IMG/VR virus record: IMGVR_UViG_3300046787_000200
Coordinates: 1-64,000 of that record
Direction: 5' to 3' (one strand)
Length of the DNA: 64,000 nucleotides
Each line of letters begins with the position of its first letter. Within the stretch, counting starts at the first letter, position 1. Below the pieces are notes generated by a model. The model made no database searches and had not been told where the DNA came from. It worked only from the letters and a program-made list of their open reading frames with translations. Positions 7,216 through 42,400 of the stretch are shown piece by piece. Both the position numbers and the translations under genes were made by a program.

Positions 7216-7440
7216 TTATACAGTAGGTGCGCCTTCTGCTTTTGGTGCATATTGCTGATGAACCTTCTTCAAGTAATTAACTTTTTCATAATTACGAACA
7301 TCATTCATCTTACGCAACTTGCGAATTTGTTTCAATGTAAGTTTAGTTTTGCGACTTTCACGCCATTTAGGTTTGCTATTATCAGCACTTACATCCTGAT
7401 AACCTGCTACCGCCTGATCAAACATTTCAAATAATTTCAT
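7216..7440 (-). CDS. Small basic head-module protein (possible internal head protein)
   Basis: 74 aa, starts MKLFEMF, sits directly after the portal gene and has its own GATAAATA box. Confidence 0.7.
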   Translation of the reverse strand: MKLFEMFDQAVAGYQDVSADNSKPKWRESRKTKLTLKQIRKLRKMNDVRNYEKVNYLKKVHQQYAPKAEGAPTV

Positions 7441-12095: not shown

Positions 12096-12926
12096 ATGAC
12101 TATCCAAAACAACCCACTAAAACAATATTTCCGTAGACCTTCAATTTATTTGAAACTACCTAGTGGTGGCAAGATGTACCCACCTAATGTTGTGACTATA
12201 CCAGAATCCGGTGAGTTAGCAGTATATCCCATGACTGCAATTGATGAGATTAGTTCAAAAACACCTGATGCGTTATATAACGGTACTGCAATGGCAGATA
12301 TTATTCGTAGCTGTATCCCAGATATCAAAGACCCGTGGGCTATTAATAGTATTGATTTAGATGCTGTATTAATTGCCATTAGATCCGCAGCCGGTGGTAA
12401 TGATATGGCAATTGCGTCTGAATGCCCAAGCTGTAAGGAAGTTTCTGATTACGGAGTTAACTTAGTTGGTATACTAAATCAACTTAAATCTGCTGATTAC
12501 GAAAAAGAATTAGTGTTAAATGATTTGTCTATTAAATTTAGACCGTTATCTTATAAAGAAATGAATGAAGCTGGTACTAGTCAATTGGAAGCACAGCGTA
12601 TTTTTATTATGTTAGAAAAAGAAGAAGATGAAGCTATACGTAATAAAAAGACACAAGAAGCATTAAAATTCATAACCGAAGTTACGATGCGTATTTTGTC
12701 ACAGACTATAACACATGTTAGAACACCTAGCGCATTTGTAGAGGAACGTGAATATATTTTAGATTTCTTACATAATTGTGATAGAGATACGTATATTGCT
12801 ATTAGAGAATACAATAGTAATCTTAAAGCACAGACTGAAATTAAACCATTGCGTATTAAATGTGTTAATTGCCAACATGAATATGATCAACAATTTACAT
12901 TGAATACATCTGATTTTTTCGGATGA
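12096..12926 (+). CDS. gp26: Baseplate hub assembly protein, gp26-like
   Basis: NPLKQYFRRPSIYLKLPSGG start, PMTAIDE, two CxxC pairs; followed by a gp51-like gene. Confidence 0.75.
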   Translation: MTIQNNPLKQYFRRPSIYLKLPSGGKMYPPNVVTIPESGELAVYPMTAIDEISSKTPDALYNGTAMADIIRSCIPDIKDPWAINSIDLDAVLIAIRSAAGGNDMAIASECPSCKEVSDYGVNLVGILNQLKSADYEKELVLNDLSIKFRPLSYKEMNEAGTSQLEAQRIFIMLEKEEDEAIRNKKTQEALKFITEVTMRILSQTITHVRTPSAFVEEREYILDFLHNCDRDTYIAIREYNSNLKAQTEIKPLRIKCVNCQHEYDQQFTLNTSDFFG

Positions 12927-13150
12927 AGCTTCTACACCTTGACCACGAGGGTGTAAAGAAGCTTATTGATGACATGGAAAATGAGTGTGCCGCTATTAAG
13001 AAAAACGCACTTAGTATGAGTTGGTACATGAGAGGTGGTGTATCTTATGAAGATATATTAAACATGTCCTCAGAGGAACGTGAAGAAATTAAAAAAATTA
13101 TTGATGGTAATTTGGATGTTACTAAGAAATCACAAATGCCATTCTTCTAA
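12923..13150 (+). CDS. Baseplate hub assembly catalyst, gp51-like
   Basis: 75 aa with SWYMRGGVSYEDILNMSxEERE; ATGA overlap with gp26. Confidence 0.6.
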   Translation: MKLLHLDHEGVKKLIDDMENECAAIKKNALSMSWYMRGGVSYEDILNMSSEEREEIKKIIDGNLDVTKKSQMPFF

Positions 13151-13660
13151 TTAATCCCGTAACTGTTCATTTATCACATCGGGTTGTTTCTTTGTAAAGA
13201 TGAACTTCGTTCATCTAAGAACTCACTTCGTTCGTTCTTATTATTTACGGTTATCTATTGTTTTTTAATTCTAATTATATACGGATATGATTGCCGATTT
13301 GAAGCCATGGTAGTGCAAATTTGCACTACCTTTGGTAAAGGGTTGTTTGCACGACCGTCATCCATTGTCATTTCTTCCCCGTCTAATTAGCTATTTGATG
13401 CTATTAAACGCTACCGGTTGCTCTGTAAAGTTTACGGGACTGTAGTTGAATATACGCACTCTAGTGTTTCATTCCGCAACGCACATTCTATGACGCAGAA
13501 ATAAAGTTGTCATAGACTTGTTGAGGGTTCGCTTTGCCGATTGCCCTCTCGGTATTCCGTGTATATCGCTATACACGCTTACTCCAGATCCGTCAGCACA
13601 GCACAATCTGTACAAACTCAAGGAGGTCCTGCAGCCAGGACAACAAATTTTTATATTAAA
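13151..13660. other. 510-bp hairpin-dense non-coding element (candidate large ncRNA or replication/packaging site)
   Basis: Lies between convergent genes in an otherwise almost gap-free genome; at least seven stem-loops and one long-range inverted repeat are visible. Confidence 0.6.
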
Positions 13661-14227
13661 TTAAGTATTGATTGTGAGGATTTTGTTATCTGTAACAGTT
13701 TGATTTGACGTGGTGTCTGTTGATCCTGAATATTTTTTTAGTAATTCACTGTTGTGGTTGAAGAAACTGTCAAATTCTGTAATTATCCAATCTCCGTTTT
13801 TGGGACTAGTATAATATAAGAAATTGTCAGTCACCCATGTTAATTTGCTTTGAACAGCAATATAACGACCCTTACGATTGAATTTCATAAACAGAATATT
13901 ACAATCGCCCGGGTCAGCTACATCCATGAGTTGTGATAACCAAGCATCTATTACTTTGCATTCCCCTGAAAGTAATAAATGAAACGGAAAGTCAGCATAA
14001 AATTTACATTCAACGTTCATTTTAGTAAACGTATGACCAGGAACAATGTCCCCTTTAAAACTTCTTACTTGACCTTCATGCAAGATTTGTGTTCTTGCTT
14101 GATTTTTTCCACCGATATAAGCTCCAGACCCCGGAGCACGAATGAATGACTCACCGTACTTCTCTGAAAGATATTTAGCGATTTCTCGCTCAAAACCGGA
14201 ACCTTTTTGTTTCTGTGGACTTGGCAT
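13661..14227 (-). CDS. Holliday junction resolvase, PD-(D/E)xK type
   Basis: KQKGSGFEREIAKYL...RAPGSGA...GDI...NVECKFY, next to gp46/gp47. Confidence 0.8.
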   Translation of the reverse strand: MPSPQKQKGSGFEREIAKYLSEKYGESFIRAPGSGAYIGGKNQARTQILHEGQVRSFKGDIVPGHTFTKMNVECKFYADFPFHLLLSGECKVIDAWLSQLMDVADPGDCNILFMKFNRKGRYIAVQSKLTWVTDNFLYYTSPKNGDWIITEFDSFFNHNSELLKKYSGSTDTTSNQTVTDNKILTINT

Positions 14228-14260: not shown

Positions 14261-16333
14261 TTATTCTATATCTACTGATGTATTATAACTTGTAAAGCCA
14301 TTTTCTTTAACAACTTTAAGAACGTTTGGTACTCGACCTGCAAGTTCTTCTCTATGAGAAACAAGCCAAATAGATTTCTGTCGTCTACGGCTCATGTCTT
14401 TAAGAATAGCTAAACTATTCTCAACACCCATTGTATCTAAACCACTATCAATCAATTCATCAATGAACAATGTATTGATCGGTGAATACAATGATTCCCA
14501 TACATCACGGAAAGCAAAGCTCAAGCCAAGAATCAATCGATTGCGTTCACCGCGACTCAAGTTATCAAAGTCAAGTTCACGACCTAACTCAGTAATTTCA
14601 ACTTGCAAGTCATTCTTAAAGATAACTTGATGTGGTAGACCGATCTTATCTAAGTAATGTGTCAAGCGACTATTCAAGTAACTCAAGTTCTGGTCAATAA
14701 TCTTCTTACGAACGAAACTATCTTTGCTAGTTAACAAATCTAACAAGAACTTTTGATGTTCCATTGTTCTTGTCAAACGATTGATAGCTTCAAAGTCAAT
14801 AGCTTGCAATGCTTGCGTTTCCATTTCGATAACTTGTTCTGCATATGGATCAGTTTCTTGTGCTTTGTTATCAATCTGATTTAGAATGTTAGCAACTTCA
14901 CTCGAATGCTTAACTGCTTCAGCTTCTGTATCATAATGCGTAACTGGTTTTATATCTAAAAATACAACAGGTTTCTCTAATAGTTGCTCATTAAATGGAT
15001 TTGACTCTTGTTTTTTATCTTCCCATACTTTCTTCAAGTTAGCTACATCACCGCTGTGACGAATAGCTTCCGCTTCAGTTTTATATGATGGGGTAGGCTT
15101 GGGCCCAATATCTTTAACTAGTGATTGGTTACTTGCTAATTGTGATTCCAATTCAGCTAAATCAGCTTTAGCATTTTCAAGTAGTGTTGTCTTTTCTAAT
15201 GTAACTTCTAAATGTTTATCATCATGGAAGTCTTGACCGCAAGCATAACACTTATGATCCTCAAGTTCTTTAACTTCCCGAACCAATTTCTCAATTAATT
15301 TTTTTTCTTTTGCAATACTTTTGGTTTGGGTATCAATTGTAATAGCAATGGCTTTCTGATCAGCTTCAGCTACTAGCCATTCTTTTAAATCACTCCAAGC
15401 TTTAAGCTCAGTTTCAATATCATATTCATTTTTACGTAGGTATGCAGTATGTGCTACAGTAACATCAGTATCATGTTTTTGTTGCCAAGCGGTAGAACGT
15501 GCAACTAATGCATTGTATGTGTCTTGTGCATCCTTTTGTTTATTCCAAAGAGTTAAGTCTTTGTGTGCTTGTAACTCAGCTTCAATATTGATTTTGCTTA
15601 GTTCATCATAATGTAACGCAAGAGTAGTCAAATCTTCATCATGTTTTTTCAACCACAATGTCTGTCTACGCTTTAGTGCATCAATCTGTTCTTTAACTCG
15701 TTTGTTAGCTTCTTCAATCGCTTTAACTCTAAATTCTTCACTTTGAATATCATCTTTGCTACGGCGAATCATCTCTTTGATAACTTCAGCCTTCTCACTT
15801 AACAAGGTGATACCCATCAATTGCTCAATGATATCTTTCTGGTCATTGTTTTTCAATGCTAAGAACGGCTCGCTATATGTGTTTAGCACAACGATGTGAC
15901 GGAACATGTCAGGTGACATGTTAATAACTTTTTCAATTGCCGCTTGTGTTTCTTTGTTCTCGCCTTGTTGATCCTCAGTAGCTTTCTCCTGAACATCATT
16001 CACATAGAACTTAAGAATATTTGGCTTACGACCACGTTCAATCTTATAATTAGTCCCGTTAACGTTGAATGTAAGAGTAACTAACATACCCTTACCATTT
16101 GTACGATTAACTAAATTATCTTTACGAATGTTATTAATGGGTTGACCGAACAATGCGTAGCTAAGACCTTGAATCAATGTAGTCTTACCTGTGCCGTTAC
16201 GTGCACCGTCACCACCTAAGTCTAAGTTCTCACCTAGAATAAGTGTTAAGTCTTTCTTGTCAAAGTCTACTGCTTGTGTTACTTGTCCGATTGATAAAAA
16301 ATTGCGTAAAGTAATGTTTTGTAATGTAATCAT
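14261..16333 (-). CDS. gp46: Recombination ATPase subunit, gp46/SbcC/Rad50-like
   Basis: Walker A NGTGKTT, zinc hook CYAC, signature LSRGE, Walker B LFIDE, D-loop SGLD, H-loop VSH. Confidence 0.95.
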   Translation of the reverse strand: MITLQNITLRNFLSIGQVTQAVDFDKKDLTLILGENLDLGGDGARNGTGKTTLIQGLSYALFGQPINNIRKDNLVNRTNGKGMLVTLTFNVNGTNYKIERGRKPNILKFYVNDVQEKATEDQQGENKETQAAIEKVINMSPDMFRHIVVLNTYSEPFLALKNNDQKDIIEQLMGITLLSEKAEVIKEMIRRSKDDIQSEEFRVKAIEEANKRVKEQIDALKRRQTLWLKKHDEDLTTLALHYDELSKINIEAELQAHKDLTLWNKQKDAQDTYNALVARSTAWQQKHDTDVTVAHTAYLRKNEYDIETELKAWSDLKEWLVAEADQKAIAITIDTQTKSIAKEKKLIEKLVREVKELEDHKCYACGQDFHDDKHLEVTLEKTTLLENAKADLAELESQLASNQSLVKDIGPKPTPSYKTEAEAIRHSGDVANLKKVWEDKKQESNPFNEQLLEKPVVFLDIKPVTHYDTEAEAVKHSSEVANILNQIDNKAQETDPYAEQVIEMETQALQAIDFEAINRLTRTMEHQKFLLDLLTSKDSFVRKKIIDQNLSYLNSRLTHYLDKIGLPHQVIFKNDLQVEITELGRELDFDNLSRGERNRLILGLSFAFRDVWESLYSPINTLFIDELIDSGLDTMGVENSLAILKDMSRRRQKSIWLVSHREELAGRVPNVLKVVKENGFTSYNTSVDIE

Positions 16334-17346
16334 AAGTTGTTATAAATGTCCAAAAGAATCTTTTTGTCAAAATTATTTGATTCGATTGCGTTAATTTGGT
16401 CAATGATAATTTGGTCTACTGATTCGAATTTCAATCCGTCTGCTGTTTGACCATTCTCATTTTGCTCTAACTTCATTGGTATCAATGCCATCTCTCGTAG
16501 TTTATGTTCTGGAATCCATGTTTCACGTAAGAAATTAGCTTCTTCGTATGATATTTCAATATCTAAATGTACTCTAACATGACTGTCAATCAATAGCAAG
16601 CCTTCAGGGTTTTCTAAGATATCACTTAGTTTATGAACACGGAAAACGGGCTGTCTAGGCCATGTATGAAATACTGGCTCACTTCCCCATTCTAAAATCA
16701 TCATACCACGTGCATCGTCACCTGCGTCAGCATAATTATGCGGGAAAGCATTACCGATATACCAAATGTTTTTACGTGCTTGTCGTTTGTGAAAATGACC
16801 ACTGAATACTTTTTCAAAGCCAGTCATATGGTCTTCACTAATCTCACCGTGATCGGGCATCTCAACCATAGCGTTCATGTAGAAGCGAGGTAATTCTAAG
16901 TGACCGAATAGATATTTGCCACCCATCTTTTGTAATTTCTTGTAATCTTCTTGTACAAGCCAGGGTGCAATAACTACATCTCCTTGACTAAAGAAGTCAT
17001 TGATAATTTTAACGTTTGGTAGATGTTTACCCCATTCAACGCTATGAATATCTCTACGGTCACGATAATAAAGATCGTGGTTACCTGGTATGAAATATAC
17101 AGTATCAAAGTTTGCACTTAGTTTTTCTAGTGCTTGTAGACCAAACTGAAGTGTGTGAATGTTAATACTTGCACGATGATGATTATAATCGCCCAAAAAG
17201 AAACAAGTTTCACACCCCTCACTCTTTGCTTTCTTAATAAACCAATCTACAAAATCGGAACAGTCTTGGTTGTGCTGTAAGCTGTTAGACTTCAATCCGA
17301 AATGAATGTCAGTGAAGACAGCGGCTTTTTTAAATAAATTACTCAT
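16330..17346 (-). CDS. gp47: Recombination nuclease subunit, gp47/SbcD/Mre11-like
   Basis: Metallophosphoesterase motifs DIH, GD, GNHD, GHLE, GHFH. Confidence 0.95.
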   Translation of the reverse strand: MSNLFKKAAVFTDIHFGLKSNSLQHNQDCSDFVDWFIKKAKSEGCETCFFLGDYNHHRASINIHTLQFGLQALEKLSANFDTVYFIPGNHDLYYRDRRDIHSVEWGKHLPNVKIINDFFSQGDVVIAPWLVQEDYKKLQKMGGKYLFGHLELPRFYMNAMVEMPDHGEISEDHMTGFEKVFSGHFHKRQARKNIWYIGNAFPHNYADAGDDARGMMILEWGSEPVFHTWPRQPVFRVHKLSDILENPEGLLLIDSHVRVHLDIEISYEEANFLRETWIPEHKLREMALIPMKLEQNENGQTADGLKFESVDQIIIDQINAIESNNFDKKILLDIYNNL

Positions 17347-18025: not shown

Positions 18026-18931
18026 TTATTCCTCATATACTGTACTACTTGAGCCGGAACCTTGTCTAGACCAACTTGGATTCAATCCATTTAATTCTAA
18101 AATATCATCACGTATATTTTGATTGCGTTTTTCGGTATTCAATACACGACAGAAACTATTTGTTATAGCAGCCGTATAATAAGCGAATGGGTTAGCAGAT
18201 TTAGCTTCATTGAAACGTAAGCCAACATAGGTTAACTGCAAGATAGCACTGTTACGCATTTCATCATTATATGTATATCCACGCCAATTATACTTCATAG
18301 CGTATTTTTCGCACATCATAATGTACATACGGGCAAGTTTGTTAGTAACTTGTCCGTGATCTTTACTGAATTCACCGGTCTCTAAATCACCTTTCCAATG
18401 ACTTTTACCTATGCATTGAAATGTATTAGTTTCATCTAATTTATAATGTTGGAATGGTGGGAAATTAACTTTGACATGGACCATGTCATCTACTTCAGCT
18501 TTGGTTGTAGTATCTTCTAAATCAGCAAAAATCTCATCTGGATCTGGTTCCTCGAACTCAAATATATCTTTTGCTGTTTTCTTTTTAACTGTTTTGCGGG
18601 GTTGTTTTGGTGCAACTGGAACATGATCCCAAGTCATTACACGAAATACCAAATCTTTAATATCTATTGAATCTGGACTAACTGCATCTTTACTGCCTTG
18701 TTCTAAACTAAGACGTAATGCTCTAGTTTCTTTTGCTTGTTGTATTGTTTCTGGTTTATATGCATAAGCTAAACTTTCTTCAATACTAGCTTGCGGCATA
18801 TCTACAATGAAATCGTAGCGATGAAATTCTGGTTTAGTAAAGTAGCAATATGCGTTTTTGCTTTCATGTATCTCTTTTAAAATGTCTTTATTATTTAAAT
18901 AGTTGACAGGTTTGCGTGATGGTAGGCTCAT
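18026..18931 (-). CDS. gp55: Late-transcription sigma factor, gp55-like
   Basis: VNYLNNKDIL start, NWRGYTYNDEM, FNEAKSANPFAYYTAAITNSFCR. Confidence 0.85.
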   Translation of the reverse strand: MSLPSRKPVNYLNNKDILKEIHESKNAYCYFTKPEFHRYDFIVDMPQASIEESLAYAYKPETIQQAKETRALRLSLEQGSKDAVSPDSIDIKDLVFRVMTWDHVPVAPKQPRKTVKKKTAKDIFEFEEPDPDEIFADLEDTTTKAEVDDMVHVKVNFPPFQHYKLDETNTFQCIGKSHWKGDLETGEFSKDHGQVTNKLARMYIMMCEKYAMKYNWRGYTYNDEMRNSAILQLTYVGLRFNEAKSANPFAYYTAAITNSFCRVLNTEKRNQNIRDDILELNGLNPSWSRQGSGSSSTVYEE

Positions 18932-18956
18932 AGTTCTCCGTTATTATGTTGATGTA

Positions 18957-18985
18957 AGTATAGCATTATTGTTGCTGAAAAGCAA
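18957..18985 (-). promoter_or_regulatory. Sigma70-type promoter for gp55
   Basis: Minus strand TTGCTT-17 nt-TATACT, followed by a GGAG RBS before the ATG at 18931. Confidence 0.7.
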
Positions 18986-19020
18986 CGATTTTGTGAGGGA
19001 AAGGGTAAAAACAGCACTTT

Positions 19021-19036
19021 TATTTAGTGCTAAATA
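19021..19036. promoter_or_regulatory. Back-to-back late-type promoter boxes (TATTTAG-TG-CTAAATA)
   Basis: Two inverted CTAAATA boxes between the divergent gp55 gene and the baseplate operon. Confidence 0.6.
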
Positions 19037-19058
19037 TAAGTAAGGATAACAACATATT

Positions 19059-20402
19059 ATGGCATCACAAGCTCAATTAGAAGCCGATATCGCTTTGGCA
19101 AAGGCGCAAGTAGCAACACTAGAACTTCAACTAGATGCAGCCGCTGGATCACCAAATCCAGATCCGGCAGTAATTGCTGATATTGAAAGAAGTTTGACTA
19201 TTGCAAAAAATTATCTAACCCAGTTACAAAATGAATTAAACCTTCTTAATACTGCATCTGATCCAAACACAAACATAGGAACTGAAGCACAAACGGTAGA
19301 AACTCAACAAACAATTAATACAGATAGTGATCCTAATTTAAATGCGAATGCCGGGGCAGTTCCCGGAACCGATATTGCAATACAAAAACAAGCAGAAGAC
19401 CTAGCGTTTAATGAGCCTGCAGGTAACAGTGATATTGAAAATTACGAACCAACTCCAATCACGGAAGAAGATCCTTTTGAGGCAGCTAGATTGGCAGCAG
19501 AAGAACGAAGCAACGAAGCTAATACGCAGGCTGCGATTGATGCAGTTAATCAATCAGTCCCTAAAGGTATCTCCACCGCATTAAACAATACACGTTCAAC
19601 TGCAACTAAAGATGATAGTGTTAACTTTCAACAAAAACCAGATTGGCGAGCAAGATTAAGTTTAGCCCCAAACGCAAACTACTTATATAAAGTTCCAAAA
19701 GAACAAGCAGGCATACTAGCACCATTACAATCTACAGATGGTGTTATATTTCCGTATACACCTGCAATTTCAGTAACATACAGTGCAGGATATGATGCTA
19801 GCGATCTAGTTCATAGTAACTACAAAGTATATCAATATAAAGGTAGTAGTGTAGACACTGTTTCAATTACGGCTGACTTCACTGCACAAGATACAACAGA
19901 AGCTAATTACTTGTTAGCCGTCATACACTTTTTCCGTAGTGTAACTAAGATGTTTTATGGACAGGATCAGAATCCAAATAACGGTGTTCCTCCTCCATTG
20001 TGTTATTTAAGTGGCTTTGGTGCATATACATTTGATTCGCATCCTTTAGTCGTAACTAACTTTACATATACAACTCCAACAGATGTAGATTATATACGTG
20101 CTGGCAGTCAGACAAATCAACCGGGTGTTAATATTTCCCAACAAAATAACATATTAAATAGTTTTGTTCCTAGTGTAGTAAGAACAGTTATTAATGGTTT
20201 ATCTCCTAAATTACCTAACTTCTCAACACAGAACTCAATGATTAATAGTGAAGCAACATATGTACCTACTAAATTACAATTGCAAATCACTTGCATACCT
20301 ATTGTTACTAGAAATGATATCAGTAATAAGTTTAGTTTAAAAGAGTATGCGACAGGTGCATTATTGCGTGGTAGCAAACGTTCAGGTGGAGGTATTTGGT
20401 AA
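19059..20402 (+). CDS. Tail-tube initiator / baseplate protein (gp48/gp54-like fold) with N-terminal extension
   Basis: C-terminal GVIFPYTP...PPPLCYLSGFG...VVTNFTY...DVDYI tube-like pattern; directly precedes a gp53-like gene. Confidence 0.55.
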   Translation: MASQAQLEADIALAKAQVATLELQLDAAAGSPNPDPAVIADIERSLTIAKNYLTQLQNELNLLNTASDPNTNIGTEAQTVETQQTINTDSDPNLNANAGAVPGTDIAIQKQAEDLAFNEPAGNSDIENYEPTPITEEDPFEAARLAAEERSNEANTQAAIDAVNQSVPKGISTALNNTRSTATKDDSVNFQQKPDWRARLSLAPNANYLYKVPKEQAGILAPLQSTDGVIFPYTPAISVTYSAGYDASDLVHSNYKVYQYKGSSVDTVSITADFTAQDTTEANYLLAVIHFFRSVTKMFYGQDQNPNNGVPPPLCYLSGFGAYTFDSHPLVVTNFTYTTPTDVDYIRAGSQTNQPGVNISQQNNILNSFVPSVVRTVINGLSPKLPNFSTQNSMINSEATYVPTKLQLQITCIPIVTRNDISNKFSLKEYATGALLRGSKRSGGGIW

Positions 20403-30486: not shown

Positions 30487-33400
30487 ATGGCAGCACGAAT
30501 TAGAACACTAAATTTTTTACCAGAAGTTTTTCAAACACCTACTAATGCACAATTCTTAGGTGCAACTCTGGATCAAATTGTTGATCAACCTAACACAATG
30601 AAAATTGAAGGTTATGTTGGTAGCAAATTTGGTTATGGTATTAATGCAAAAGACAAGTATGTAGTTGAACCAACTAAAACAAGAACAAATTATCAATTAG
30701 ATCCAGGTGTTGTCTTTACAAAAACAAACACATCTACTGCACAAGATTTTATATCTTATCCAGGCATTATTGATGCGTTGAAGCTTGAAGGTGGAATTAC
30801 TAATAATAACGATAGATTATTCAATAGTCAGTTCTACTCTTGGGATCCGTTTGTAAACCTAGATAAGATTATTAACTTCAATCAATATTACTGGTTACCA
30901 ACTGGTGCACCGGTTGTAAACATTTCTACTGACATAGTTTATACAGCAACAGATTATGTTGTTGAAAGCTTACCTAATGGATATAATATTTCCAGTGATA
31001 TTAATCCTGCAGGAGCGACTAATCCAACACTAACATTGATTCGTGGTGGTACTTATACGTTTGCAGTAAACCAAACTAGTGATTTTTGGATTCAAGGTAA
31101 ACCAGGTGTTACTGGTTTTGACCCACAACAAACTAATTTACAAACACGTGATGTATTGGGAGTTGAAAACAACGGTACCAACGCCGGCATTGTAGTATTC
31201 AGTGTTCCATATAAAGATGCGCAAGATGAATATAACTTGCCAGGTAACAATCTAGTAGATGTAGTATCAACATTACAGTTTAGTCAAATCAATGGATTGA
31301 GATTATCAGAAATCGGTGGCGGCATCGACGGTGTATCATCATTGAATGGTTTGACGTTAATGTTCTATAACGGCTTAACAGATGAAGTTGCTAACTTTGG
31401 TGCATATGACTTACAAACGTTTGATCAAACTGATGTTACTCCGGTATCATTTGATGATGATTCTTTGATATATCAACCAGTAAGTAGTTGGTTCTTTCAA
31501 ATTAATTATATCGACAATCCTGAAGATGCAACAGATCCAATTATTCAATTAGTACCATATCAGAATATACCTACTAGTCAAAAAATTACAGCTACTTATG
31601 GTACACAATGGAAAGCAAGAAATTTCTACCGTACCCCAAGTGGTGTAATTAATCTTGTTCCTTATTTAAGCGCAATCTTAGATACATTGTATTACCAAGA
31701 CGGCACAAGTCCAAATAAAGTAGGTATAATTAAGTTAATTGAAAGTAACTCAACTAATCAATTAGATATCAATGACATATTGGGACAAACACAATATACT
31801 AGCCCGAATGGCGTAGTGTTTACTAATGGTCTTAAAGTTAGTTTCAGTGGTGATATTTACCCTGCAAGTTATACTGAAGGTGAATATTATGTTGAAGGTG
31901 TTGGTACTGCAATTGAACTAATCAATACTGCTGACTTGATAGCACCCGAACCCTTCACTGAAGGAACATATACACCATACGATTCGTTACCATATGATAT
32001 TGGTAACTTTGATAGTACCTTATACATCCCTGTACAACAAGATTATATTACTATTGCTCGTAACAGTATTGATAAAAATGCATGGGCTCGTAGTAATCGT
32101 TGGTTCCACATTGACGTTATTAATGCAACTGCAACATATAACAACAATCCTAGTATTGCTACAACTTATGCAACACAAGATAACAAAGCAAAACGCCCAA
32201 TTATTGAATTTTACCCTAACTTAAGATTGTTCAATAACGGTGTTGTAGGTAAAGATCCTATCGATTTCTTTGATGATAGAACAACAGATGCGTTTACATA
32301 TGTTGCTGGTCAACAACAATACTGGCCAGACGTTGAAGTATATACTGCATATACTGGTACTATTGCTGCCGCAACAGGAACAAGTACTACTATAACTATC
32401 GATGCAGATGATGTTACAGGTACATTCCAAGTTGGTCAGTATATTAGTGATACTACAAACGTATTACCTAGAAATACTCAGATTACTAGTATCAGTGGAA
32501 CAACTACATTAACAATTACAGTAACTTGGGATGACTCTACAACTATTACTGCCACATCAAATGCATCATTGGTTGCAAATGATGTATCAAATGACAACTA
32601 TTCATTATATGATGGTGCAAGAATTGTATTCTCAGCAGATACCAATGAGAACGTAAGAAACAAAATATATGTTGTAAGATTCTCAAATATTGCAGGTGGT
32701 ACGAACACTGTAATTACATTAACTGAAGCAGTTGATGGATTAGTTCTTCCATTAGAAGAAATATTTGCATTTAAAGGATATAACAATCAAGGTAAAGATT
32801 TCTACTTTGACGGTATTGAATGGTTATTAGCACAGCAGAAAACTACTGTTAATCAAGCTCCATTGTTTGATATATTTGACAATGATGGTGTAAGCTTTGC
32901 TGATACTGATGTTTATGTTGGATCATCATTTGCTGGTAACAAATTATTCAGTTATGGAATAGGCTCAGGTATCAAAGATATTGTATTGGGTTTCCCATTA
33001 AGATATAGTGCAGTTAACAACGTAGGTGATATTAGCTTTGATGTTCCATTAAATTCAGCAACATTTAACTATGTTCGTGGAACCACACCAATAACACAAA
33101 ATGTTAATACAGGATATGTGTATAACTATACATCTGGTACTGATGTTGTACGTCAATTAGGCTGGCAAACTGCAGTAGCAGAAAGTCGCCAATATCAGAT
33201 ATTCAGTTTTGACTATATTGCAACAGATTTAACAACTACATATACATGTGATATTGCAGCCGCTACTGACACTGTGTGGCCTAATATTCAAGTATATGTT
33301 AATAACGAAATACAACCTTCAACAAGTTATACATATACTATCGGAGCTAATTCTACAGTCATCACGTTTACTGTACCTGATCCATTAGTAGATACTATTG

Positions 33401-36400
33401 TTGAAGTTTCTATATTAAGTGATCAAGTTAGTTCAACTGCATACTATCAAGTACCAATTAACTTAAGTAACAATCCATTCAATGAAGATGTTACTGTAGT
33501 TAATGTAGGTGATATTCGTGGACAATATCAAAGTATATTCTATAACAACCCAAATACTACCGGCAATGTATTTGGATCAAATAATTACCGTGATTTAGGT
33601 AATCTTGTGCCATGGGGTAATAAAATTATTCAGAACAGTGCAAGTTTAGCATTGCCTGGATCATTGTTAAGATTACAAAATCATAACTTGTTTAGTTCTA
33701 TTCAGTACAATAGTCAACAGTATATTACATTCAAATCATTGTTGATTAACACAATTGATAGTACTGAGTATAATATAATGCAGACACCTGCAGTAATATT
33801 AGATGATGCATTAGATCAAATTACCGCAAATAAAACAACAACAGAACCTTTCTTCTGGAGTGATATGTTGCCAAACAAGGCAGCATACGCAACTAATACA
33901 TACACATTTGCAAACAGTTTAGATGTAAGTATATATCCATTAACAAGAATTTATAATTTTGATACAGCTAATTATTATGGCGTATTGGTATATTTGACAA
34001 GAACAGTTGATAATTTTACATCGACCTCACAACTTATTGTTAACCAAGATTATACTGTAAGTACAGATAGTCCGTCATTGACAATCACTAAAGATTTGTT
34101 ACCAGGTGACATAGTTACTATCAAAGAATATACACAAACATTTGGTTCATATGTTCCAAATACTCCTACAAAATTAGGATTGTATCCTTCATTTATTCCT
34201 GAAGTTGTATTAGATAGTAATTATTCACAACCTACTTATTTCATTGTAGGGCATGATGGTTCATACACTAAATTATACGGTGACTATATTGATGGTCATC
34301 TAGTTGATTTTAGAGATCAGGCTCTATTAGAATTTGAAACACGTATCTATAATAATTTGAAATTAACAGATACTGTACCTATCAGTGAATTTGACGTTAT
34401 CCCTGGTTTCTTTAGAACAACAGACTACACGTATGATGAAGTATTAGAAATTTATAGTCAATACTTCTTAAATTGGGTAGGTCAAAATCGTATTGAATAT
34501 AAGAAACAATTTTATCAAGCCAATAACGAGTTCACTTATAACTATACACAATCCGGTAACAGACTTAACAATCAACCATTTGAGCAAGGGTTCTGGAGAG
34601 GTATATATGAATATTTCTATGACACTAGTACGCCAAATACAACTCCATGGGAGATGTTAGGATTTAGTGATCAACCTACATGGTGGACAAATAGATATGG
34701 TCCTGCTCCATATACAAGTGATAACTTAGTATTGTGGGGAGATTTAGCACAAGGTATTAATTGGAACAATGGTGATCCAGTCGTTCTACCTAATTGTGTA
34801 AGAGAAGGATTGTTAGATGTAATCCCAGTTGACAGTCAAGGCGACTTATTGTCACCTTTCGATGCAGTCATGGGTAACTACAATCAAAAAACATTCCGCA
34901 ATGATTGGGTAGTAGGAGATGTTGGACCTGCTGAGTTCAGCTATCGTAGAAGTAGCTCATATCCATATGATTTGATGCAAATTCTTGCGCTTACAAAACC
35001 TGCACAATTCTATAACTTAGGATTTGATGTAGACAATTACAAATATAACGCAGAATTTAATCAATATTTGGTCAACAATCGCAGCCATTTAGTAATAAGT
35101 GATGTTGCTATATACGGTAACGGCACAGCTAAAACAAGTTATGTTAACTGGATAGTTGATTATGAGAAACAAGTTGGTGTAGATGCAACTACTAACATAA
35201 CTGATTTGTTTGACAACTTAGATGTTCGTTTGATTTATAGATTAGCAGGCTTTAGTGATAAGAGTTTATTAAATTTCTTTGTTGAAAAGGGTACACCTAA
35301 CAGTAGAAATGCATCACTATTAATTCCCGATGAAAGTTATAGTGTATTGTTATATGATAACGTACCACTAACAACTATTATCTATAGCAGTGTTGTAGTA
35401 CAAAGTACCAGCACTGGTTGGAAAGTATTTGGTAATTCACAAGATACTGCATACTTTACGGTATCAGTACCTAAGATAAACGGTAACTACAACAGAGTTA
35501 ATGTAGGTGATTTGTCAGTTCAATTAGCAAAAGACTATGTAACAGACAGCACAGCACTAATTCCATACGGTACTGAGTTTCCTGACTTACAAGGAGTAAG
35601 TCAGTTTATTGCAAGCTATGGACATTACTTATCAACTCAAGGTGTATTATTTGAACAAATTGAATCTGGTATAGATGTTAATTGGAATCAAATGGTCACT
35701 GAGTTGTTATATTGGGCACAAAGTGGTTGGGAGACAGGAAGTATTATTAACTTGAATCCTGCGGCTAACTTAATAACTATTAATAAAGATAGTTATGTAG
35801 TTCAACCTTTGACTCTACAAAGACAAAACTTTATTTTAAATCAAAATCTATATCCAATTCAAAGTGTTGATTTGGCTGTAATACGTGACAGTACATTGTT
35901 TAGTGCTAAACCATTAAATGAAGGGGACACAGTTGCGTATGGTCAATTCAATATTAGTAACTTTGAACACGGTATTGTATTTGATAATGTAACATTATTC
36001 AATGATACATTGTACAATCTTGTAACTGGTTTACGCCAGAATCGTATCTTAACAAGAGGCACTAAATCTGCCGATTGGAATGGTACAGTTGATGCACAAG
36101 GCTTTATTCTTAACCAAGACAACATACAAGAATGGAGTCCTAATGTAAAATATACAAGAGGCAATATAGTTAAGTACAAAAACAAATATTGGTTCGCATT
36201 AAAAGTATTAAATGCACAAGTAACATTTGATGAACAATACTGGAAAGAAACTGATTACAATGAAATTCAAAAAGGCTTGTTACCTAATAGTTCAACACGC
36301 TCATATGAATCTACTTTGTTCTATGATACAAATAAATCTAACTTAGACCAAGATAGTGATTTACTAAGCTGGTCATTGATTGGATATCGCCCACGTGATT

Positions 36401-39400
36401 ATTTGGCACTTGCTGATTTGACTGATATTACTCAAGTTAATGTTTATAAGAACTTGATTAAAGAAAAAGGTACTCGCATTGCAGCCAATGCCTTTAAGGG
36501 ATTAACATTACCTCAAGGTGGTATTGATTATGATATCTATGAAAACTGGGCTATTAAGACCGGTGAGTTTGGTGGTGTATTAAATGACAACTTTGTTGAC
36601 TTCCGCTTAAATCAAAATCTATTAACAAGTAATCCAAGTATTGTAGGATTAACTAATGGTATAGATACCGATGGCGTACAACAAGGTGTACCTCTATATT
36701 CAGTATTCAACTACGGTAGACCAATTAGCAATCCTGATGTACTACCAACATTGCCAGTAGATACACCCAATAAACTATTCCCTAATGCTGGATATGTTAA
36801 TTTTAATGATGTTAAAATTTCATCATACTATTACAATGGATTGAACACTGCCGTTACTCCTCTATCTAACTTATATGTAAATGAATATGTATGGTTAGCG
36901 GATTATAATAACACATGGCAAGTATACACACCAACTAGTGCAGGACAAGTAATTAGTGCAATTAATAACTTGAATGGTACTGTTACAATTCAATTTAATG
37001 GTCCACATAATCTAACAAAGTATCAACCATTTGCAATTGTTAACTTCAATGAAAATATTGATGGTTATAGAATTGTTGCAACAATTGTGGATACTACTAA
37101 AGTAACCATAGCACTAAGCTTACCTGGATCTATTACTACCATAACAGGTCAAGGTGTTGCGTTGAAATTCTCATCACAACGTATAGCTACTCCAAGTGAT
37201 GTTAACACATTACCATTACTTGATAGTGAATTTGTAAAAAATAAAGTTTGGGTTGATACAAACAATGATGGTTCTTGGGCTGTATATCGTAAGAGTTTAA
37301 ATTATGTATATACTGATGAATTATTAAAAGATGGTTCAACAACTTATGGAAGTGCAGTAGCACAGACTAGTAATTTAGGTTACTTAGTAACAGACGCAGA
37401 TGCAGGTGTAGCATATCGTTATGCTTATAGCCCTGTGTTTGATAATTACAGCATTGTACAGACCATTACAAAAGATGCATCATTTGGTACAACTATTGAA
37501 TATGTAGATGATGTGTTTGTAATTTCACAACCTACTGGTGCTTCATACACTGATAGAAAAGTTTATATCTATGAGTTAGTAATTAACACCTTAGTGAATG
37601 AATTACAAGAAGTACAAGTAATTACTGCTCCTAATACAGTAACTAACTGGGGTTCTTCAATCGCATTATCCGGAGACAAGAACTGGTTGTATATCTCTGC
37701 TTATGAACAGAATTTAGTTTATGCATATCGTAAATCAGTTCTAACAGGTGAATATGAATTTGTTGAAACTATAACTGATGCAGTATTAAGTTCAGGTGAC
37801 AACTTTGGTTATTCAATCGCTACAAATTATTATGGTAATAATGTTGTAATTAGTGCTCCTAACCAAGATAGTACTGTTACTGATTTTGGTTACGCATACG
37901 CATATGATAGATTAGTACAAACATTCGAAGCTCCTTATAATAGCTTACCATATGCACCGCAAACATTTAGTTTGATATTCACACCTACAACTACAACAGT
38001 ATCAGTAACAGATACTGATGCAACTAATGACCGTTTCACATGTACTGATAGCTCAGTATTGACTATAGGTGATCCTATTGTCTTTACTGGCACTACCGTA
38101 TTTGGTGGTGTTGCGCTCAACACAGTTTATTATGTGTTAACTAAACCTACAGGAACTACTTTCACAGTATCTACTACACGCAGTGGTTCTGTGCTACAGT
38201 TACAAACTGCATCGGGTACAATGACAGGTAACCAACAAACAGAACCATTGTTTGTAAGTGTTAATGGAACATTGATAGATGACAATGAATATGGAGTAGT
38301 TGGATCATTGTTGAATGTGTATGCATCATTGACTGCAGGTGATATTGTTACTGTAAGTGGCTCAGAATTTATACTAACACAAACATTCCAATCATCATCT
38401 ACTAACGCATATGAAATTGGTACAAACTTCGGTTACAGTTTAGATGTAGATACATATGCTAACGAAATATTAATTGGTGCTCCGTTTGAAATCAACGCAC
38501 AAAACCAAGAAGGTGCAGTATATCGCTATACCAATAGTGGTGGAAGTTACGGTTTAATTACCGGCACAACAGCAGGTAATGTAACTTCAGCAACTACTAT
38601 TTTATTAAATGGCTATGCAGTAATTATCCCTACAGGAAATGCAACAGTAGTAGCGAACGCAATCAATAACGCAAACATCACAAATGTTATCGCTTCAGCG
38701 ACTGACGGTATATTGACTATTCAAGTTATAAGTGTTGACTTAGCATTTGCCAATGACAAGCTATCATTATCTGTATTAGATATCGATGTGTTAACTCAAT
38801 TGGGTGTCAGCATTTATACTGAAACACAAGTAATTAATGACCCTCATAGTCAGGGTAGAACTCAGTTTGGTTCTACAATCAAGTTTAACTCAAGTGGTTC
38901 ATTTGTAGTTAGTGCACCAGTAAGTGCTCGTTATGCAGAAACAACGTTTGATGCAAGTGATGACGAAAACTATGACAATGATACATTGTTTGACAACAAT
39001 ACAACACAGTTTATAGATAGTTTTGTTAATGCAGGTGCAGTATACATGTATGATTACTTACCAGTATATAATGAAACTGTATCTAACTCTGGTGTATATG
39101 TATATGCACAGAGTGTAAATGCATTGAACGAAGATTACGGAAGTCAACCATATTATGGTACTGCGTTAGATTTCAATAACAATAGTGTTATGATTGGTAC
39201 TCCTAACTTCAGACCAGGTATTGATAACGGTCAAGTTATTATATACAACAATGCTACTGGTGAGACAGATTGGTCAGTGTATCGTAACTCTGCCCCTATC
39301 GTAAACACAGATGCTATTCAAAATGTTCAGTTGTATAGTGTATCAACCAATAATACATTAGTTAATTTAGATTATATTGATCCATTGCAAGGTAAAATAT

Positions 39401-42400
39401 TAGGTGCAGTACGAGAGAACTTAGATATTGTTTCTAATGTAGATCCTGCAAATTATAATTCACCTACTGCAACTAATACAGGTTCTACTGTATGGGGTCC
39501 TGCACAAGTAGGTAAATTATGGTTTAATACTTCAACTACACGATTTGTAAACTATCATCAAAGTAATGATGTTGTTTATAATAGTCAATGGTGGGGTAGA
39601 GTATTTCCTGGTAGTGATGTAAAAGTTTATAGTTGGGTCACAAGTGATGTGCCACCTATTAGTTATCAAGGTCCAGGCACTCCTTATGATATTGAAGAAT
39701 ACGTAGAACAATACTCATTGAATAGTACAGGTTCATTAGTTCCTGTATATTACTATTGGGTTAGAAATACTAATATAGTGTTTACTAAAACAGGTAAAAC
39801 TCTATCAGATACTATATGTGAATCATATATTGCTACCCCATTAGCAACTGGCATTCAATATATGGCAGCAATACAACCAAATGTATTTGGATTGTATAAT
39901 TCAGGATCAGATATAAATGCTACAGATACTGCATTACATATTGGATTCAGTACAGGAACAAGTGATGATGTATCACATAGCGTTTATAGTTTAATTCGTA
40001 GTAACTATGCTGATGATTTCTTACCAGGATTACCTGGAATTGGTGACACTATAGTTCCAGAATCATTATATAACAGAATGATAGAAAGCTTCAGTGGGGT
40101 TGATCAAACCGGAGCAGTAGTTCCTGATCCGTTCTTACCTAAGCCAGTGCAGTCAGGTATATTGGTTCGTCCTCGTCAAAGCTTCTTCTATAACAGATAT
40201 AAAGCATTAGAAAACTATTTGAAATTTGCAAATGAAGTATTTTTACAATATCCATTAGCTGAAACTAATAGTTTAAAATTCTTATTCACTGAAGGTGCAA
40301 TTAACCCATCTACAGTAGATAATCCTAACTGGCCAGGGTTACCTCAGCGTTTCTATAATACACAAGATTATTGGGAACTAGTTAACTGGTGGGCAACTGG
40401 TTATAGTGATAGTACTAAATCAGCAATGTTAGTAGAATCATATTATGATTTAGCTACAATAAATGCTCAAGTTGGATTGATTGTTACTGTAAACAGAAAC
40501 GGTGAAGGCTTACAAGAAACTTATGTGTTTGATGGCACAGAATGGGTTCGTATTGGTTTGCAAAACGGTACAATACAATTTAAGAGTTCATTGTGGGATT
40601 ATTCTACTGCTAGAATAGGTTTTGGTGATAACTTCTTTGATACTACACCATACGATACTTTCCCTAGTGAAGAAACACGTTATATCATTCGTGCATTAAA
40701 TGAAGAATTACCTAGCGAATTGTTATTGTATAGAAATGAAGCATTGATTTTAATGTTCCAATACATCGTAAGTGAAACAATTGAATCACAAAACTACTTA
40801 CCATGGTTGAACAAGACTTCATTTATTGATGTAGCACATACTATACGTGAGTTATTACCGTTGGAAGTTTTCCAAAGTGATAACCAAGATTTCTTAGCTG
40901 GATACTTGAATGAAGCCAAACCATATCATGTGGTTATCAAAGACTTCTTGTTTAAGTATACTGGTACAGATGTATATGATGGTGAAATTACTGACTTTGA
41001 TTTACCAGCACAGTACAATACACAGTATCAACAATATATTACTCCTGAATTAGTATATTCTAATCCAAGCAGTATCAATCAATATTTGCCAACTGACCCT
41101 ATATGGCAGACTCAGCCATATGTTAATTGGTTTAACAATCAAGGTTTAAGTATCACTGGAGTAAACAATTATCCAATTACCGTATTGAGTTCATATGTAG
41201 CATTGAATAGTAATTCGATGGTAGTTGATAACGTATATGGATTCCCTACTACCGGTGTTGTGACTATAGGAACTGAACAAATTGCTTATAGCAGTGTTGA
41301 TAGAGCTTATAGTACTATAAGTGGATTAACCCGCGGTGTTAATGGAACTGCAATTACAAATCATATCCCAGGCGAACAAATTATAATTGATTTGCCTCCT
41401 GTGTTGTTATTAAATGGTGGACGTGGGTATGCTGAACCTCCAAAAGTTACAGCATATATTGACACATCTATATATCCTGCCCCAAGACGTGCAGCCATAC
41501 TACAACCAGTAATGAACTTAGATACAATATTACGTATCGATGTAGTAGATCCAGGTGATGGATATCAAGTATTACCTGAAATACGTATTGAACCAAGTGA
41601 AGTAATTACTTTTGCTAGTACAGATGTTGACACATTAACTAATACGATTACATTACAAACACAGTTCATACAAACAGGTGACTTAATCAAGTATTATGTA
41701 GGTAGCAATACTACACCAATTGGTGGATTAGATAATGAACAATATTATTATGTTTCAGTATTAGAGAATACACCATTCTTCGTAATAGCATTGTATACTA
41801 ATTATGCAGATGCATTGCAGGATCATGACCGAGTTGTGTTAACTAGTGTTGGTTCTGGTACTAATAATAATATTGCTGTAAGTGCAAGAGCAAGCTGTGT
41901 ATCTACATCTATACCAATCAGAGAAAATCAAATTACATTGAGATTTGATAGAACAACTTATAGCTCTGATATTACAGAATGGACGCCTAATAGATTCTAT
42001 GGTAGTTTCTATGCTGGCTTATTTAATAACAGCACAAGAATTGCAAGTTCAAGCATAACACTTGAATCAACTCAACCACCTATCGAAAGCATTTTAGCTA
42101 GTGCTCAAGGTGCAACATTTGAGATTCAAGGTGTAACAAATGACCAAGTATTGACATGGTCATCATTGACACGTACAGTTGGATCTACTACTGCATCTAC
42201 TAACGTGATAACATTGTCATATAATAGTTCAGAACCAAACGCTTCTGGGTCAACTATTGGTTTCTACGTTGACATGCCGGTTAAATTTACCGGTGCATTA
42301 TCTGGAACTGGTTTAGTAGACGGAACAACTTACTATATTATAGAAGTTATTAACGAGTCAGACTTTAAAGTTTCAGCAACAGTGAACGGATCTGCGGTTG

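What the first reader, a model, noticed from the sequence alone, without database searches (positions are those of the whole stretch)
13151..13660. 510-bp densely structured non-coding element between convergent genes
Seen: this is by far the largest gap in the window. Stems are AGATGAAC/GTTCATCT (13198-13216), AAGAAC/GTTCTT (13217-13239), a perfect 22-bp palindrome (13309-13330), TCTATGAC/GTCATAGA (13487-13516), GAGGG/CCCTC with an inner TCG/CGA (13523-13548), CGTGTATA/TATACACG (13558-13577; GCGA GNRA loop on the minus strand) and GTCCTG/CAGGAC (13626-13641). A long-range pair, TCCCGTAA (13155-13162) with TTACGGGA (13432-13439), closes a domain of about 280 nt. It starts right after the resolvase stop on the minus strand. 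I do not recognise it as tRNA, tmRNA, RNase P or a group I intron. Inference: an undescribed large phage ncRNA, probably minus-strand, or a cis-acting origin or packaging site.
Basis: partly seen in the sequence, partly recalled or inferred. Interest (0 to 1): 0.8.

Follow-up and report, generated by a model that had tools for sequence, protein, structure and literature searches.

The report
New large pseudoknotted phage RNA
The only sizeable gene-free stretch in this giant freshwater phage genome encodes a roughly 450-base, intricately folded RNA that matches no described RNA family; more than a hundred related uncultured phages keep it, so it very likely has a function, which is still unknown.

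Summary
The same interval occurs in 191 of 200 related viral contigs: 122 distinct copies, down to 57% identity, length kept at about 500 nt. It shows no codon periodicity and its indels are mostly 1 nt. Base-pair covariation is very strong. In the central domain 98.6% of cells are paired, 24 of 30 pairs show double changes, and 0 of 500 shuffles reach this. G-U versus A-C counts (302 vs 19) place the RNA on the minus strand, directly 3' of the resolvase gene. No Rfam 15 family matches at E<=10 in three diverged copies. There is no homologue in 50,697 phage genomes, in E. coli, or in the cultured relatives checked (PA5oct, SCTP-2, Phosso). The GC-skew switch lies elsewhere, so an origin is not supported. 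Best reading: a new class of large structured phage RNA acting through its fold, as an RNP scaffold or ribozyme. Function, transcript ends and partner are not shown.

The parts
13198..13654 (-). Whole conserved RNA element (about 457 nt in RNA sense, 13654 -> 13198)
   Evidence: Conserved in 191/200 related loci. Non-coding. Strand from G-U 302 vs A-C 19 and alifold energy -71.5 vs -56.6.
13645..13654 (-). Conserved 5' block UAA(A/C)AAUU(U)G, just after the resolvase stop; either a -10-like promoter word or the 5' tail of the RNA
   Evidence: At least 80% conserved in 78 loci, with no conserved -35. The word is not enriched in the window.
13293..13644 (-). Core domain closed by P1 (13641-13644 with 13293-13296)
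   Evidence: RNAalifold on 60 and on 93 sequences. P1 shows only one-sided U->C changes opposite G, so support is weak.
13626..13641 (-). H1 hairpin (GUCCUG/CAGGAC)
   Evidence: All inner pairs covary with 3-4 pair types; G-U occurs in 16 sequences.
13582..13625 (-). H2 (invariant CUCC..GA with UC..GGAG) enclosing the variable hairpin H3 (13592-13617)
   Evidence: H2 is 99.6% paired and invariant; H3 has 5/6 pairs compensatory, and some classes carry tandem G-A.
13558..13577 (-). H4 hairpin with a GNRA loop
   Evidence: 6/6 pairs compensatory; loop variants seen.
13412..13554 (-). Central four-way junction: H5 (13550-13554 with 13412-13416), H6 (13523-13548), H7 (13483-13521), H8 (13475-13480 with 13417-13422) and the variable hairpin H9 (13447-13474)
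   Evidence: Covariance model R1 scores 149.6 bits at 13410-13558(-). On 93 loci 98.6% of cells are paired, 24/30 pairs show double changes, 0/500 shuffles reach this, and slid controls give 29-38% paired.
13499..13504 (-). PK1 5' strand (in the loop of H7), pairs with 13368-13373
   Evidence: At least 8 complementary variants. Own-partner duplex 6.1 vs 4.1 for mismatched partners, with a flat control. Pair states change 14-20 times on the tree.
13368..13373 (-). PK1 3' strand
13436..13439 (-). PK2 5' strand (UCCC), pairs with 13376-13379 and crosses H5 and H8
   Evidence: Twelve complementary variants, for example UCCC/GGGA, GCC/GGC, ACC/GGU, CCU/AGG, UCUC/GAGA, AUCC/GGAU and CUCC/GGAG. Every one of the 93 sequences keeps at least 3 contiguous pairs.
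13376..13379 (-). PK2 3' strand (GGGA)
13380..13410 (-). H11 hairpin, lying between H5 3' and PK2 3'
   Evidence: 9/11 pairs compensatory, 97% paired, many G-U.
13305..13335 (-).
   Evidence: 96% paired. Only the loop-closing pair covaries; an A->G change in 7 sequences gives G-U.
13354..13354 (-). Base that changes in step with 13297 as the same letter (G:G, U:U, C:C, A:A); probably a tertiary contact
   Evidence: MI 1.06 bits. 9 of 9 phylogenetically independent pairs go the same way, p = 0.004.
13297..13297 (-). Partner of 13354
13240..13292 (-). A/U-rich linker, variable in length and sequence
   Evidence: A sigma-70-like promoter word in the window is kept in only 23% of relatives.
13198..13239 (-). 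Twin 3' hairpins: H12 (13217-13239; stem, tandem G-A, C-GNA-G loop) and H13 (13198-13216; C-GNA-G loop)
   Evidence: 7/7 and 7/8 pairs compensatory, also in the most diverged copies. No U-tract follows, and the terminator scan finds nothing here.
13151..13197 (.). Unassigned tail holding a conserved block (13157-13175); either the 3' tail of the RNA or the 3' end signal of the convergent + gene
   Evidence: Conserved sequence, but no covariation with any partner.

Best explanation
13198-13654 (minus strand) is the gene for a previously undescribed structured RNA of about 450 nt. It is carried as a fixed, single-copy core feature by one uncultured freshwater and estuarine clade of T4-core jumbo phages. 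SHOWN: it is non-coding. It is conserved as well as the neighbouring core proteins. It is constrained for RNA-type pairing on the minus strand. It folds into a core of about 350 nt with a four-way junction, at least ten covarying helices and two pseudoknots that tie two distant loops onto one single-stranded segment (13368-13379). Many joining nucleotides are invariant, and at least one non-Watson-Crick tertiary covariation is present. Two 3' hairpins with C-GNA-G loops follow the core. INFERRED: it is transcribed with, or just behind, the gp47/gp46/resolvase (Mre11-Rad50-like) recombination operon, because it starts 0-77 nt after the resolvase stop on the same strand and no terminator lies between. 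It is released or stabilised as a discrete RNA, with the twin hairpins protecting the 3' end. It acts in trans through its three-dimensional fold, as the RNA subunit of a ribonucleoprotein or as a ribozyme or ligand-binding RNA, rather than by base-pairing to a target or as a DNA site.
For: Conservation and constant length. Non-coding. Covariation on a structure-blind MAFFT alignment: 51 of 91 pairs compensatory. Central domain with controls. Helix table. Pseudoknots: with many independent events on a tree. Strand. Fixed synteny behind the resolvase in 160 of 161 loci with enough flanking sequence. In L146 the resolvase gene is replaced and the RNA is kept, so the RNA is selected for itself. 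One copy per window. Contigs from RNA libraries cover it. No known family matches.
Against: No transcript ends, strand-specific reads or abundance are available. The metatranscriptome contigs cover the neighbouring genes equally and could include DNA. No promoter or terminator could be assigned. No partner protein, ligand or activity is known. The invariant stem of the long hairpin could also reflect a DNA-level or protein-binding constraint. The choice of trans-acting over cis-acting rests only on size, complexity and analogy.
Confidence: 0.6

Rival explanations
1. A cis-acting 3'-UTR element of the recombination operon. It would be a structured end that blocks 3' exonucleases, directs processing, or stops or insulates transcription where two convergent units meet, with no function as a free RNA.
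For: It lies directly after the last gene of a minus-strand operon and faces a convergent gene. It ends in two stable hairpins. No promoter of its own was found.
Against: About 350 nt of doubly pseudoknotted core with invariant joining regions is far more than known stabilisers or terminators need. No U-tract follows the hairpins. The RNA is retained when the upstream gene is replaced.
Confidence: 0.2
2. A very diverged member of a known catalytic RNA class, either a group-I-like ribozyme or an RNase-P-like RNA.
For: The order H8 5' ... PK2 5' ... H8 3' - hairpin H11 - PK2 3' has the same topology as P3/P7/P8 of group I introns. Short words resemble RNase P conserved regions (GGAAUACCG; ACAGAGCAACCGG) (the comparison with RNase P is from memory).
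Against: No Rfam intron or RNase P model reaches E<=10 in three diverged copies. Both flanking genes are intact and convergent, so there are no exons to join. The helix order does not fit RNase P: H5 closes at 60% of the length and is followed by more domains. ARAGORN finds no tRNA genes in the window.
Confidence: 0.07
3. A partner or guide RNA of the adjacent PD-(D/E)xK nuclease, by analogy with nuclease genes that are followed by their own structured RNA (TnpB and its omega RNA).
For: The nuclease gene lies immediately 5' on the same strand in 160 of 161 loci.
Against: Homologous resolvases in PA5oct, SCTP-2 and Phosso have no such RNA. L146 keeps the RNA without the gene. The protein's C-terminal tail is poorly conserved. 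There is no terminal hypervariable guide segment and no mobile-element ends.
Confidence: 0.05
4. A DNA-level element: replication origin, packaging site or protein-binding operator.
Against: Pairing tolerates G-U but not A-C, which is strand-specific. Pseudoknots covary. The cumulative GC-skew minimum is at about 19 kb, at a divergent gene switch, not here. The genes here converge.
Confidence: 0.03
5. A missed protein-coding gene or pseudogene.
For: ORFs of 50-68 codons with TTG starts exist in the window copy.
Against: Variation shows no 3-nt periodicity (0.21, 0.17, 0.19 by phase). 1-nt indels dominate (1181 of about 1900 gap runs). The longest open frame differs in strand and length between copies.
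Confidence: 0.01

Closest known systems
GOLLD, ROOL and OLE: large 'ornate' bacterial and phage ncRNAs (Rfam families; cryo-EM in PMC12286853)
   Same: They are hundreds of nucleotides long and multi-domain, and were found by comparative analysis with heavy covariation. GOLLD was first seen in lake metagenomes, and GOLLD and ROOL are often phage-borne. Their biochemical function is unknown.
   Different: No sequence or structure match. This RNA is shorter (about 450 nt). It is not next to tRNA genes and not mobile: it sits at one fixed locus of one phage clade. Nothing here shows multimerisation.
Group I intron catalytic core
   Same: Comparable size. It has a pseudoknot in which a hairpin (H11, like P8) lies between the 3' strands of two crossing helices, GNRA loops and peripheral loop-strand contacts. 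T4-type phages carry such introns.
   Different: It does not lie inside a gene, there is no Rfam RF00028 match, the joining segments differ in length, and no P1 or guanosine-site features were identified.
Bacterial RNase P RNA
   Same: Comparable size, long-range helices and short words recalling conserved regions I and V.
   Different: All RNase P models give E>10. The helix order differs and there are no tRNA genes nearby.
PA5oct 'lncRNAs' ncRNA001-004 (PMC7318152)
   Same: They are ORF-free transcribed regions of 236-619 nt in the closest well-studied cultured relative.
   Different: They are not homologous (best 11.5 bits, E 0.12 with filters off). They lie at different loci, and no conserved structure has been reported for them.
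TnpB / IscB omega RNAs
   Same: A structured, pseudoknotted RNA encoded next to a nuclease gene on the same strand.
   Different: The nuclease family is different, there is no transposon and no guide segment, and the RNA persists without the gene.

Membership tests
Any Rfam 15 family (4227 models) | Covariance-model match at the gathering score, or at least a consistent sub-threshold match | tested here: not met
   No gathering-score hit in the 64-kb window. At E<=10 there are only unrelated chance hits, and they differ between the three diverged copies tested.
Group I intron | Interrupts a gene, with exons on both sides | tested here: not met
   The flanking genes are complete Pfam matches and converge.
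Group I intron | P3-P7 pseudoknot with P8 between the 3' strands | tested here: inconclusive
   H8/PK2/H11 share this topology. Joiner lengths differ and no guanosine-binding site could be recognised.
Group I intron | Match to RF00028 | tested here: not met
RNase P RNA | Match to the bacterial, archaeal or nuclear RNase P models | tested here: not met
RNase P RNA | P1-P4 core order, with the P4 3' strand near the 3' end | tested here: not met
   H5 closes at 13412-13416 and about 120 nt of further core domains follow it.
tRNA / tmRNA | ARAGORN detection | tested here: not met
   0 genes in the window.
GOLLD / ROOL | Rfam model match; usual neighbourhood of tRNA genes in phages or prophages | tested here: not met
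GOLLD / ROOL / OLE-like behaviour | Homo-oligomeric assembly | not testable with these tools
   Needs native gels, SEC-MALS or cryo-EM.
Intrinsic terminator | G+C-rich hairpin followed by a U-tract | tested here: not met
   No site in 13151-13660 on either strand. H13 is followed by UUUAC, CUUAA, UCUAA and similar.
Replication origin | GC-skew turning point; constraints symmetric at DNA level | tested here: not met
   The skew minimum is at about 19 kb. G-U 302 vs A-C 19.
Nuclease guide RNA (omega-RNA-like) | Obligate co-occurrence with the nuclease gene and a terminal variable guide | tested here: not met
   Resolvase homologues lack the RNA. The RNA occurs without the gene in L146. The variable part is an internal A/U-rich linker.
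Protein-coding gene | Codon periodicity, frame-preserving indels, a conserved ORF | tested here: not met

The most novel reading that the evidence does not exclude
This is the RNA subunit of a new ribozyme or RNA-protein machine that works with the phage's recombination and replication apparatus (Mre11-Rad50-like gp46/47 plus resolvase). It would be a new catalytic or scaffolding RNA fold specific to jumbo phages. Its doubly pseudoknotted core would form an active or binding site, and the same-letter covariation 13354/13297 would mark an unusual tertiary or partner contact.
Probability: 0.25. Interest if true: 0.95.

Novelty: new member of a known kind. Interest (0 to 1): 0.8.

Why it matters
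Large, highly structured RNAs with complex tertiary folds are rare, and in the past have often proved to be ribozymes or the cores of RNP machines. This one already has more than 120 distinct natural sequences, two well-supported pseudoknots and a compact size that suits cryo-EM and chemical probing. It sits at a fixed place beside DNA recombination genes in an abundant but uncultured group of freshwater jumbo phages. It is therefore a ready candidate for a new RNA class. It also shows that essential-looking phage functions can lie in what annotation pipelines leave as an empty gap. I rated novelty as a new member of a known kind because large ornate ncRNAs of unknown function are already a recognised category. 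As an RNA family it has no detectable relative.

Tried and rejected
- DNA similarity searches with the interval and with 8.5 kb around it against 50,697 phage genomes found no match. A search against E. coli genomes also found none.
- A scan of 185,579 species genomes with a 16-base invariant pattern returned 120 loci, all chance matches by nhmmer.
- Covariance-model searches of the resolvase neighbourhoods of SCTP-2, PA5oct and Phosso, and of three of the four PA5oct RNA-seq 'lncRNA' loci (ncRNA001, 002, 004), found nothing.
- Laying metatranscriptome contigs showed coverage of the element but equally of its neighbours, with no strand or end information.
- The T4 late-promoter word TATAAATA is depleted in the window. 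The conserved AUAAAAAU word is not enriched. An internal sigma-70-like promoter (TTCAAA-18-TATAAT) is kept in only 23% of copies.
- By eye on the alignment, the H4 GNRA loop type does not follow the H6 pair type.
- I did not pass a typed pseudoknot structure to the count of structure pairs, to avoid sending a long repetitive string. The pseudoknots were tested in Python instead.

Full report
**Setting.** The window is the first 64 kb of a 352-kb IMG/VR viral contig. Around the finding the minus strand carries a gp47-like phosphoesterase (16330-17346), a gp46/Rad50-like ATPase (14261-16333) and a 188-aa PDDEXK_15 endonuclease (13661-14227). Homologues of this endonuclease in cultured phages are annotated as Holliday-junction resolvase. 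Two plus-strand genes converge on it: a T4-type baseplate protein (12096-12926) and a 75-aa ORF (12923-13150). Beyond them lies a minus-strand gp5-like hub-lysozyme. By resolvase similarity the closest cultured relatives are the jumbo phages Salicola SCTP-2, Pseudomonas PA5oct and Sinorhizobium Phosso (40-45% aa identity). No phage genome in the reference collection matches at DNA level.

**Conservation.**
- A protein-anchored search with the resolvase returned 80 loci, and all carry the interval at 69-100% nucleotide identity with length 496-528 nt.
- A context-free scan with an invariant 16-base pattern added 120 loci, and an nhmmer profile finds the element in 191 of the 200 loci.
- This gives 122 distinct full-length copies, 93 of them below 95% identity, down to 57% identity to the window.
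- Variation has no 3-nt periodicity, gaps are mostly 1 nt, and no ORF is conserved, so the element is not coding.
- Conservation is patchy, with invariant blocks next to variable ones, as in structured RNAs.

**Structure.**
- On a structure-blind MAFFT alignment of 60 copies, RNAalifold predicts 91 pairs, and 51 of them show compensatory double changes.
- A covariance model of the central domain finds one copy in the window (13410-13558, minus strand, 149.6 bits) and one in each of 93 non-redundant loci.
- On that alignment 98.6% of cells are paired, 24 of 30 pairs change on both sides, no shuffle out of 500 reaches the observed values, and partners slid by 1-3 columns give only 29-38% pairing. 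That alignment was fitted to the model and so leans towards it. One search, which is structure-blind, shows the same.

**Pseudoknots.** A scan for stacked covarying pairs outside the nested model found two crossing helices.
- PK1 joins the loop of hairpin H7 (13499-13504) to 13368-13373. It has at least eight complementary versions, for example UUAUCU/AGAUAA, UCACUU/AAGUGA, UUGUCU/AGACAA, UCGUUU/AAACGA and UUGAUU/AAUCAA.
- PK2 joins 13436-13439 to 13376-13379 with twelve versions, and it crosses H5 and H8.
- For PK1, own-partner complementarity clearly exceeds that of mismatched partners (6.1 vs 4.1, with a flat control). For PK2 the margin is smaller (3.7 vs 3.1), but all 93 sequences keep at least 3 pairs.
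- On a tree built without these columns, individual PK1 pairs switch state 14-20 times. The signal therefore does not come from one inherited change. Recombination among phages could inflate these counts.

The 8-bp pair 13155-13162 with 13432-13439 fails the same test (3.33 vs 3.38).

**Strand.** In well-aligned pairs there are 302 G-U/U-G cells against 19 A-C/C-A cells. The alignment also folds better in this sense (-71.5 vs -56.6 kcal/mol). The RNA is therefore the window's minus strand, in the same sense as the resolvase gene and starting 0-77 nt after its stop.

**Other features.**
- Positions 13354 and 13297 change together as the same letter (G:G 57, U:U 22, C:C 2, A:A 2; MI 1.06 bits). 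In 9 of 9 phylogenetically independent contrasts they go the same way. No third partner was found, and I cannot explain this.
- A variable A/U-rich linker follows the core. After it come two hairpins that covary even in the most diverged copies. Both end in C-GNA-G loops, and the first has tandem G-A pairs.

**Context.** Synteny is fixed. In 160 of 161 loci with enough 5' sequence the resolvase gene precedes the RNA and the convergent baseplate genes follow it. In the single exception (L146) the resolvase gene is replaced by radical-SAM/SPASM genes and a SegE-like GIY-YIG endonuclease gene, and the RNA remains. The cultured relatives have no comparable gap after the resolvase and no match to the model. 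The three PA5oct RNA-seq-defined 'lncRNA' loci that were searched (ncRNA001, 002, 004) do not match either. None of the 120 loci sampled from cellular genomes carries the element.

**What it is not.**
- No Rfam 15 family matches. Three diverged copies give only different chance hits at E<=10.
- It is not a tRNA or tmRNA.
- It is not an intron, because both neighbouring genes are intact.
- It is not an intrinsic terminator.
- It is not at the GC-skew turning point, which lies at about 19 kb where gene orientation diverges.
- The resemblance to RNase P conserved words and the group-I-like pseudoknot topology are leads only. The membership tests that could be run failed.

**Expression.** Contigs from four metatranscriptomic libraries cover the element, one of them with 2 differences in 210 nt. 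They cover the flanking genes as well, carry no strand information and may include DNA. No promoter or terminator could be assigned.

**Mechanism.**
- Shown: selection acts on a specific, compact, pseudoknotted minus-strand RNA fold.
- Inferred: the RNA is co-transcribed with the recombination operon and acts as a folded RNA in trans, as an RNP scaffold, ribozyme or ligand binder, with the twin hairpins as a 3' end module.
- I put about 0.95 on 'conserved structured RNA on the minus strand' and about 0.6 on the full statement.
- Rivals, with my confidence in each: a cis-acting 3'-UTR element (0.2), an unrecognisably diverged known ribozyme (0.07), a partner RNA of the nuclease (0.05), a DNA site (0.03) and a coding gene (0.01).

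**Verdict.** This is a real and, as far as these libraries and the searched literature show, undescribed class of large structured phage RNA. It merits experimental follow-up.

Noticed in passing
window 13354 and 13297: Two positions 57 nt apart change together as the same letter (G:G, U:U, C:C, A:A; MI 1.06 bits; 9 of 9 independent contrasts). The relation is not Watson-Crick and remains unexplained.
   Followed up: partly
L146:5786-7161: In one relative the resolvase gene beside the RNA is replaced by radical-SAM and SPASM genes and a SegE-like GIY-YIG homing endonuclease gene. The RNA is retained.
   Followed up: partly
L167:1574-2261: One copy has an insertion of about 170 nt inside the variable hairpin H9 of the RNA.
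   Followed up: no
window 30487-49362 (+): A single ORF of 6291 codons.
   Followed up: no
whole window: The T4 late-promoter word TATAAATA occurs once against 11.5 expected from shuffles, so it is strongly avoided. The promoters of this phage are unknown.
   Followed up: no
window about 18931-19059: Divergent gene switch that coincides with the cumulative GC-skew minimum of the window. It is a better candidate for a replication-related boundary than the finding.
   Followed up: no
window 13157-13175: Conserved block (RNA sense GAUAAAUGAAYAGUUACGG) directly beside the stop of the convergent 75-aa gene. No pairing partner was found, and it is unclear which strand it serves.
   Followed up: partly
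L203:1987-3000 (Sinorhizobium phage Phosso) and L202:1479-2141 (PA5oct): Unannotated gaps of about 1 kb and 0.66 kb upstream of the resolvase genes of cultured relatives. They do not match the RNA model.
   Followed up: partly
window 7216-7440 (-): A 74-aa ATG ORF fills the second largest apparent gap.
   Followed up: no
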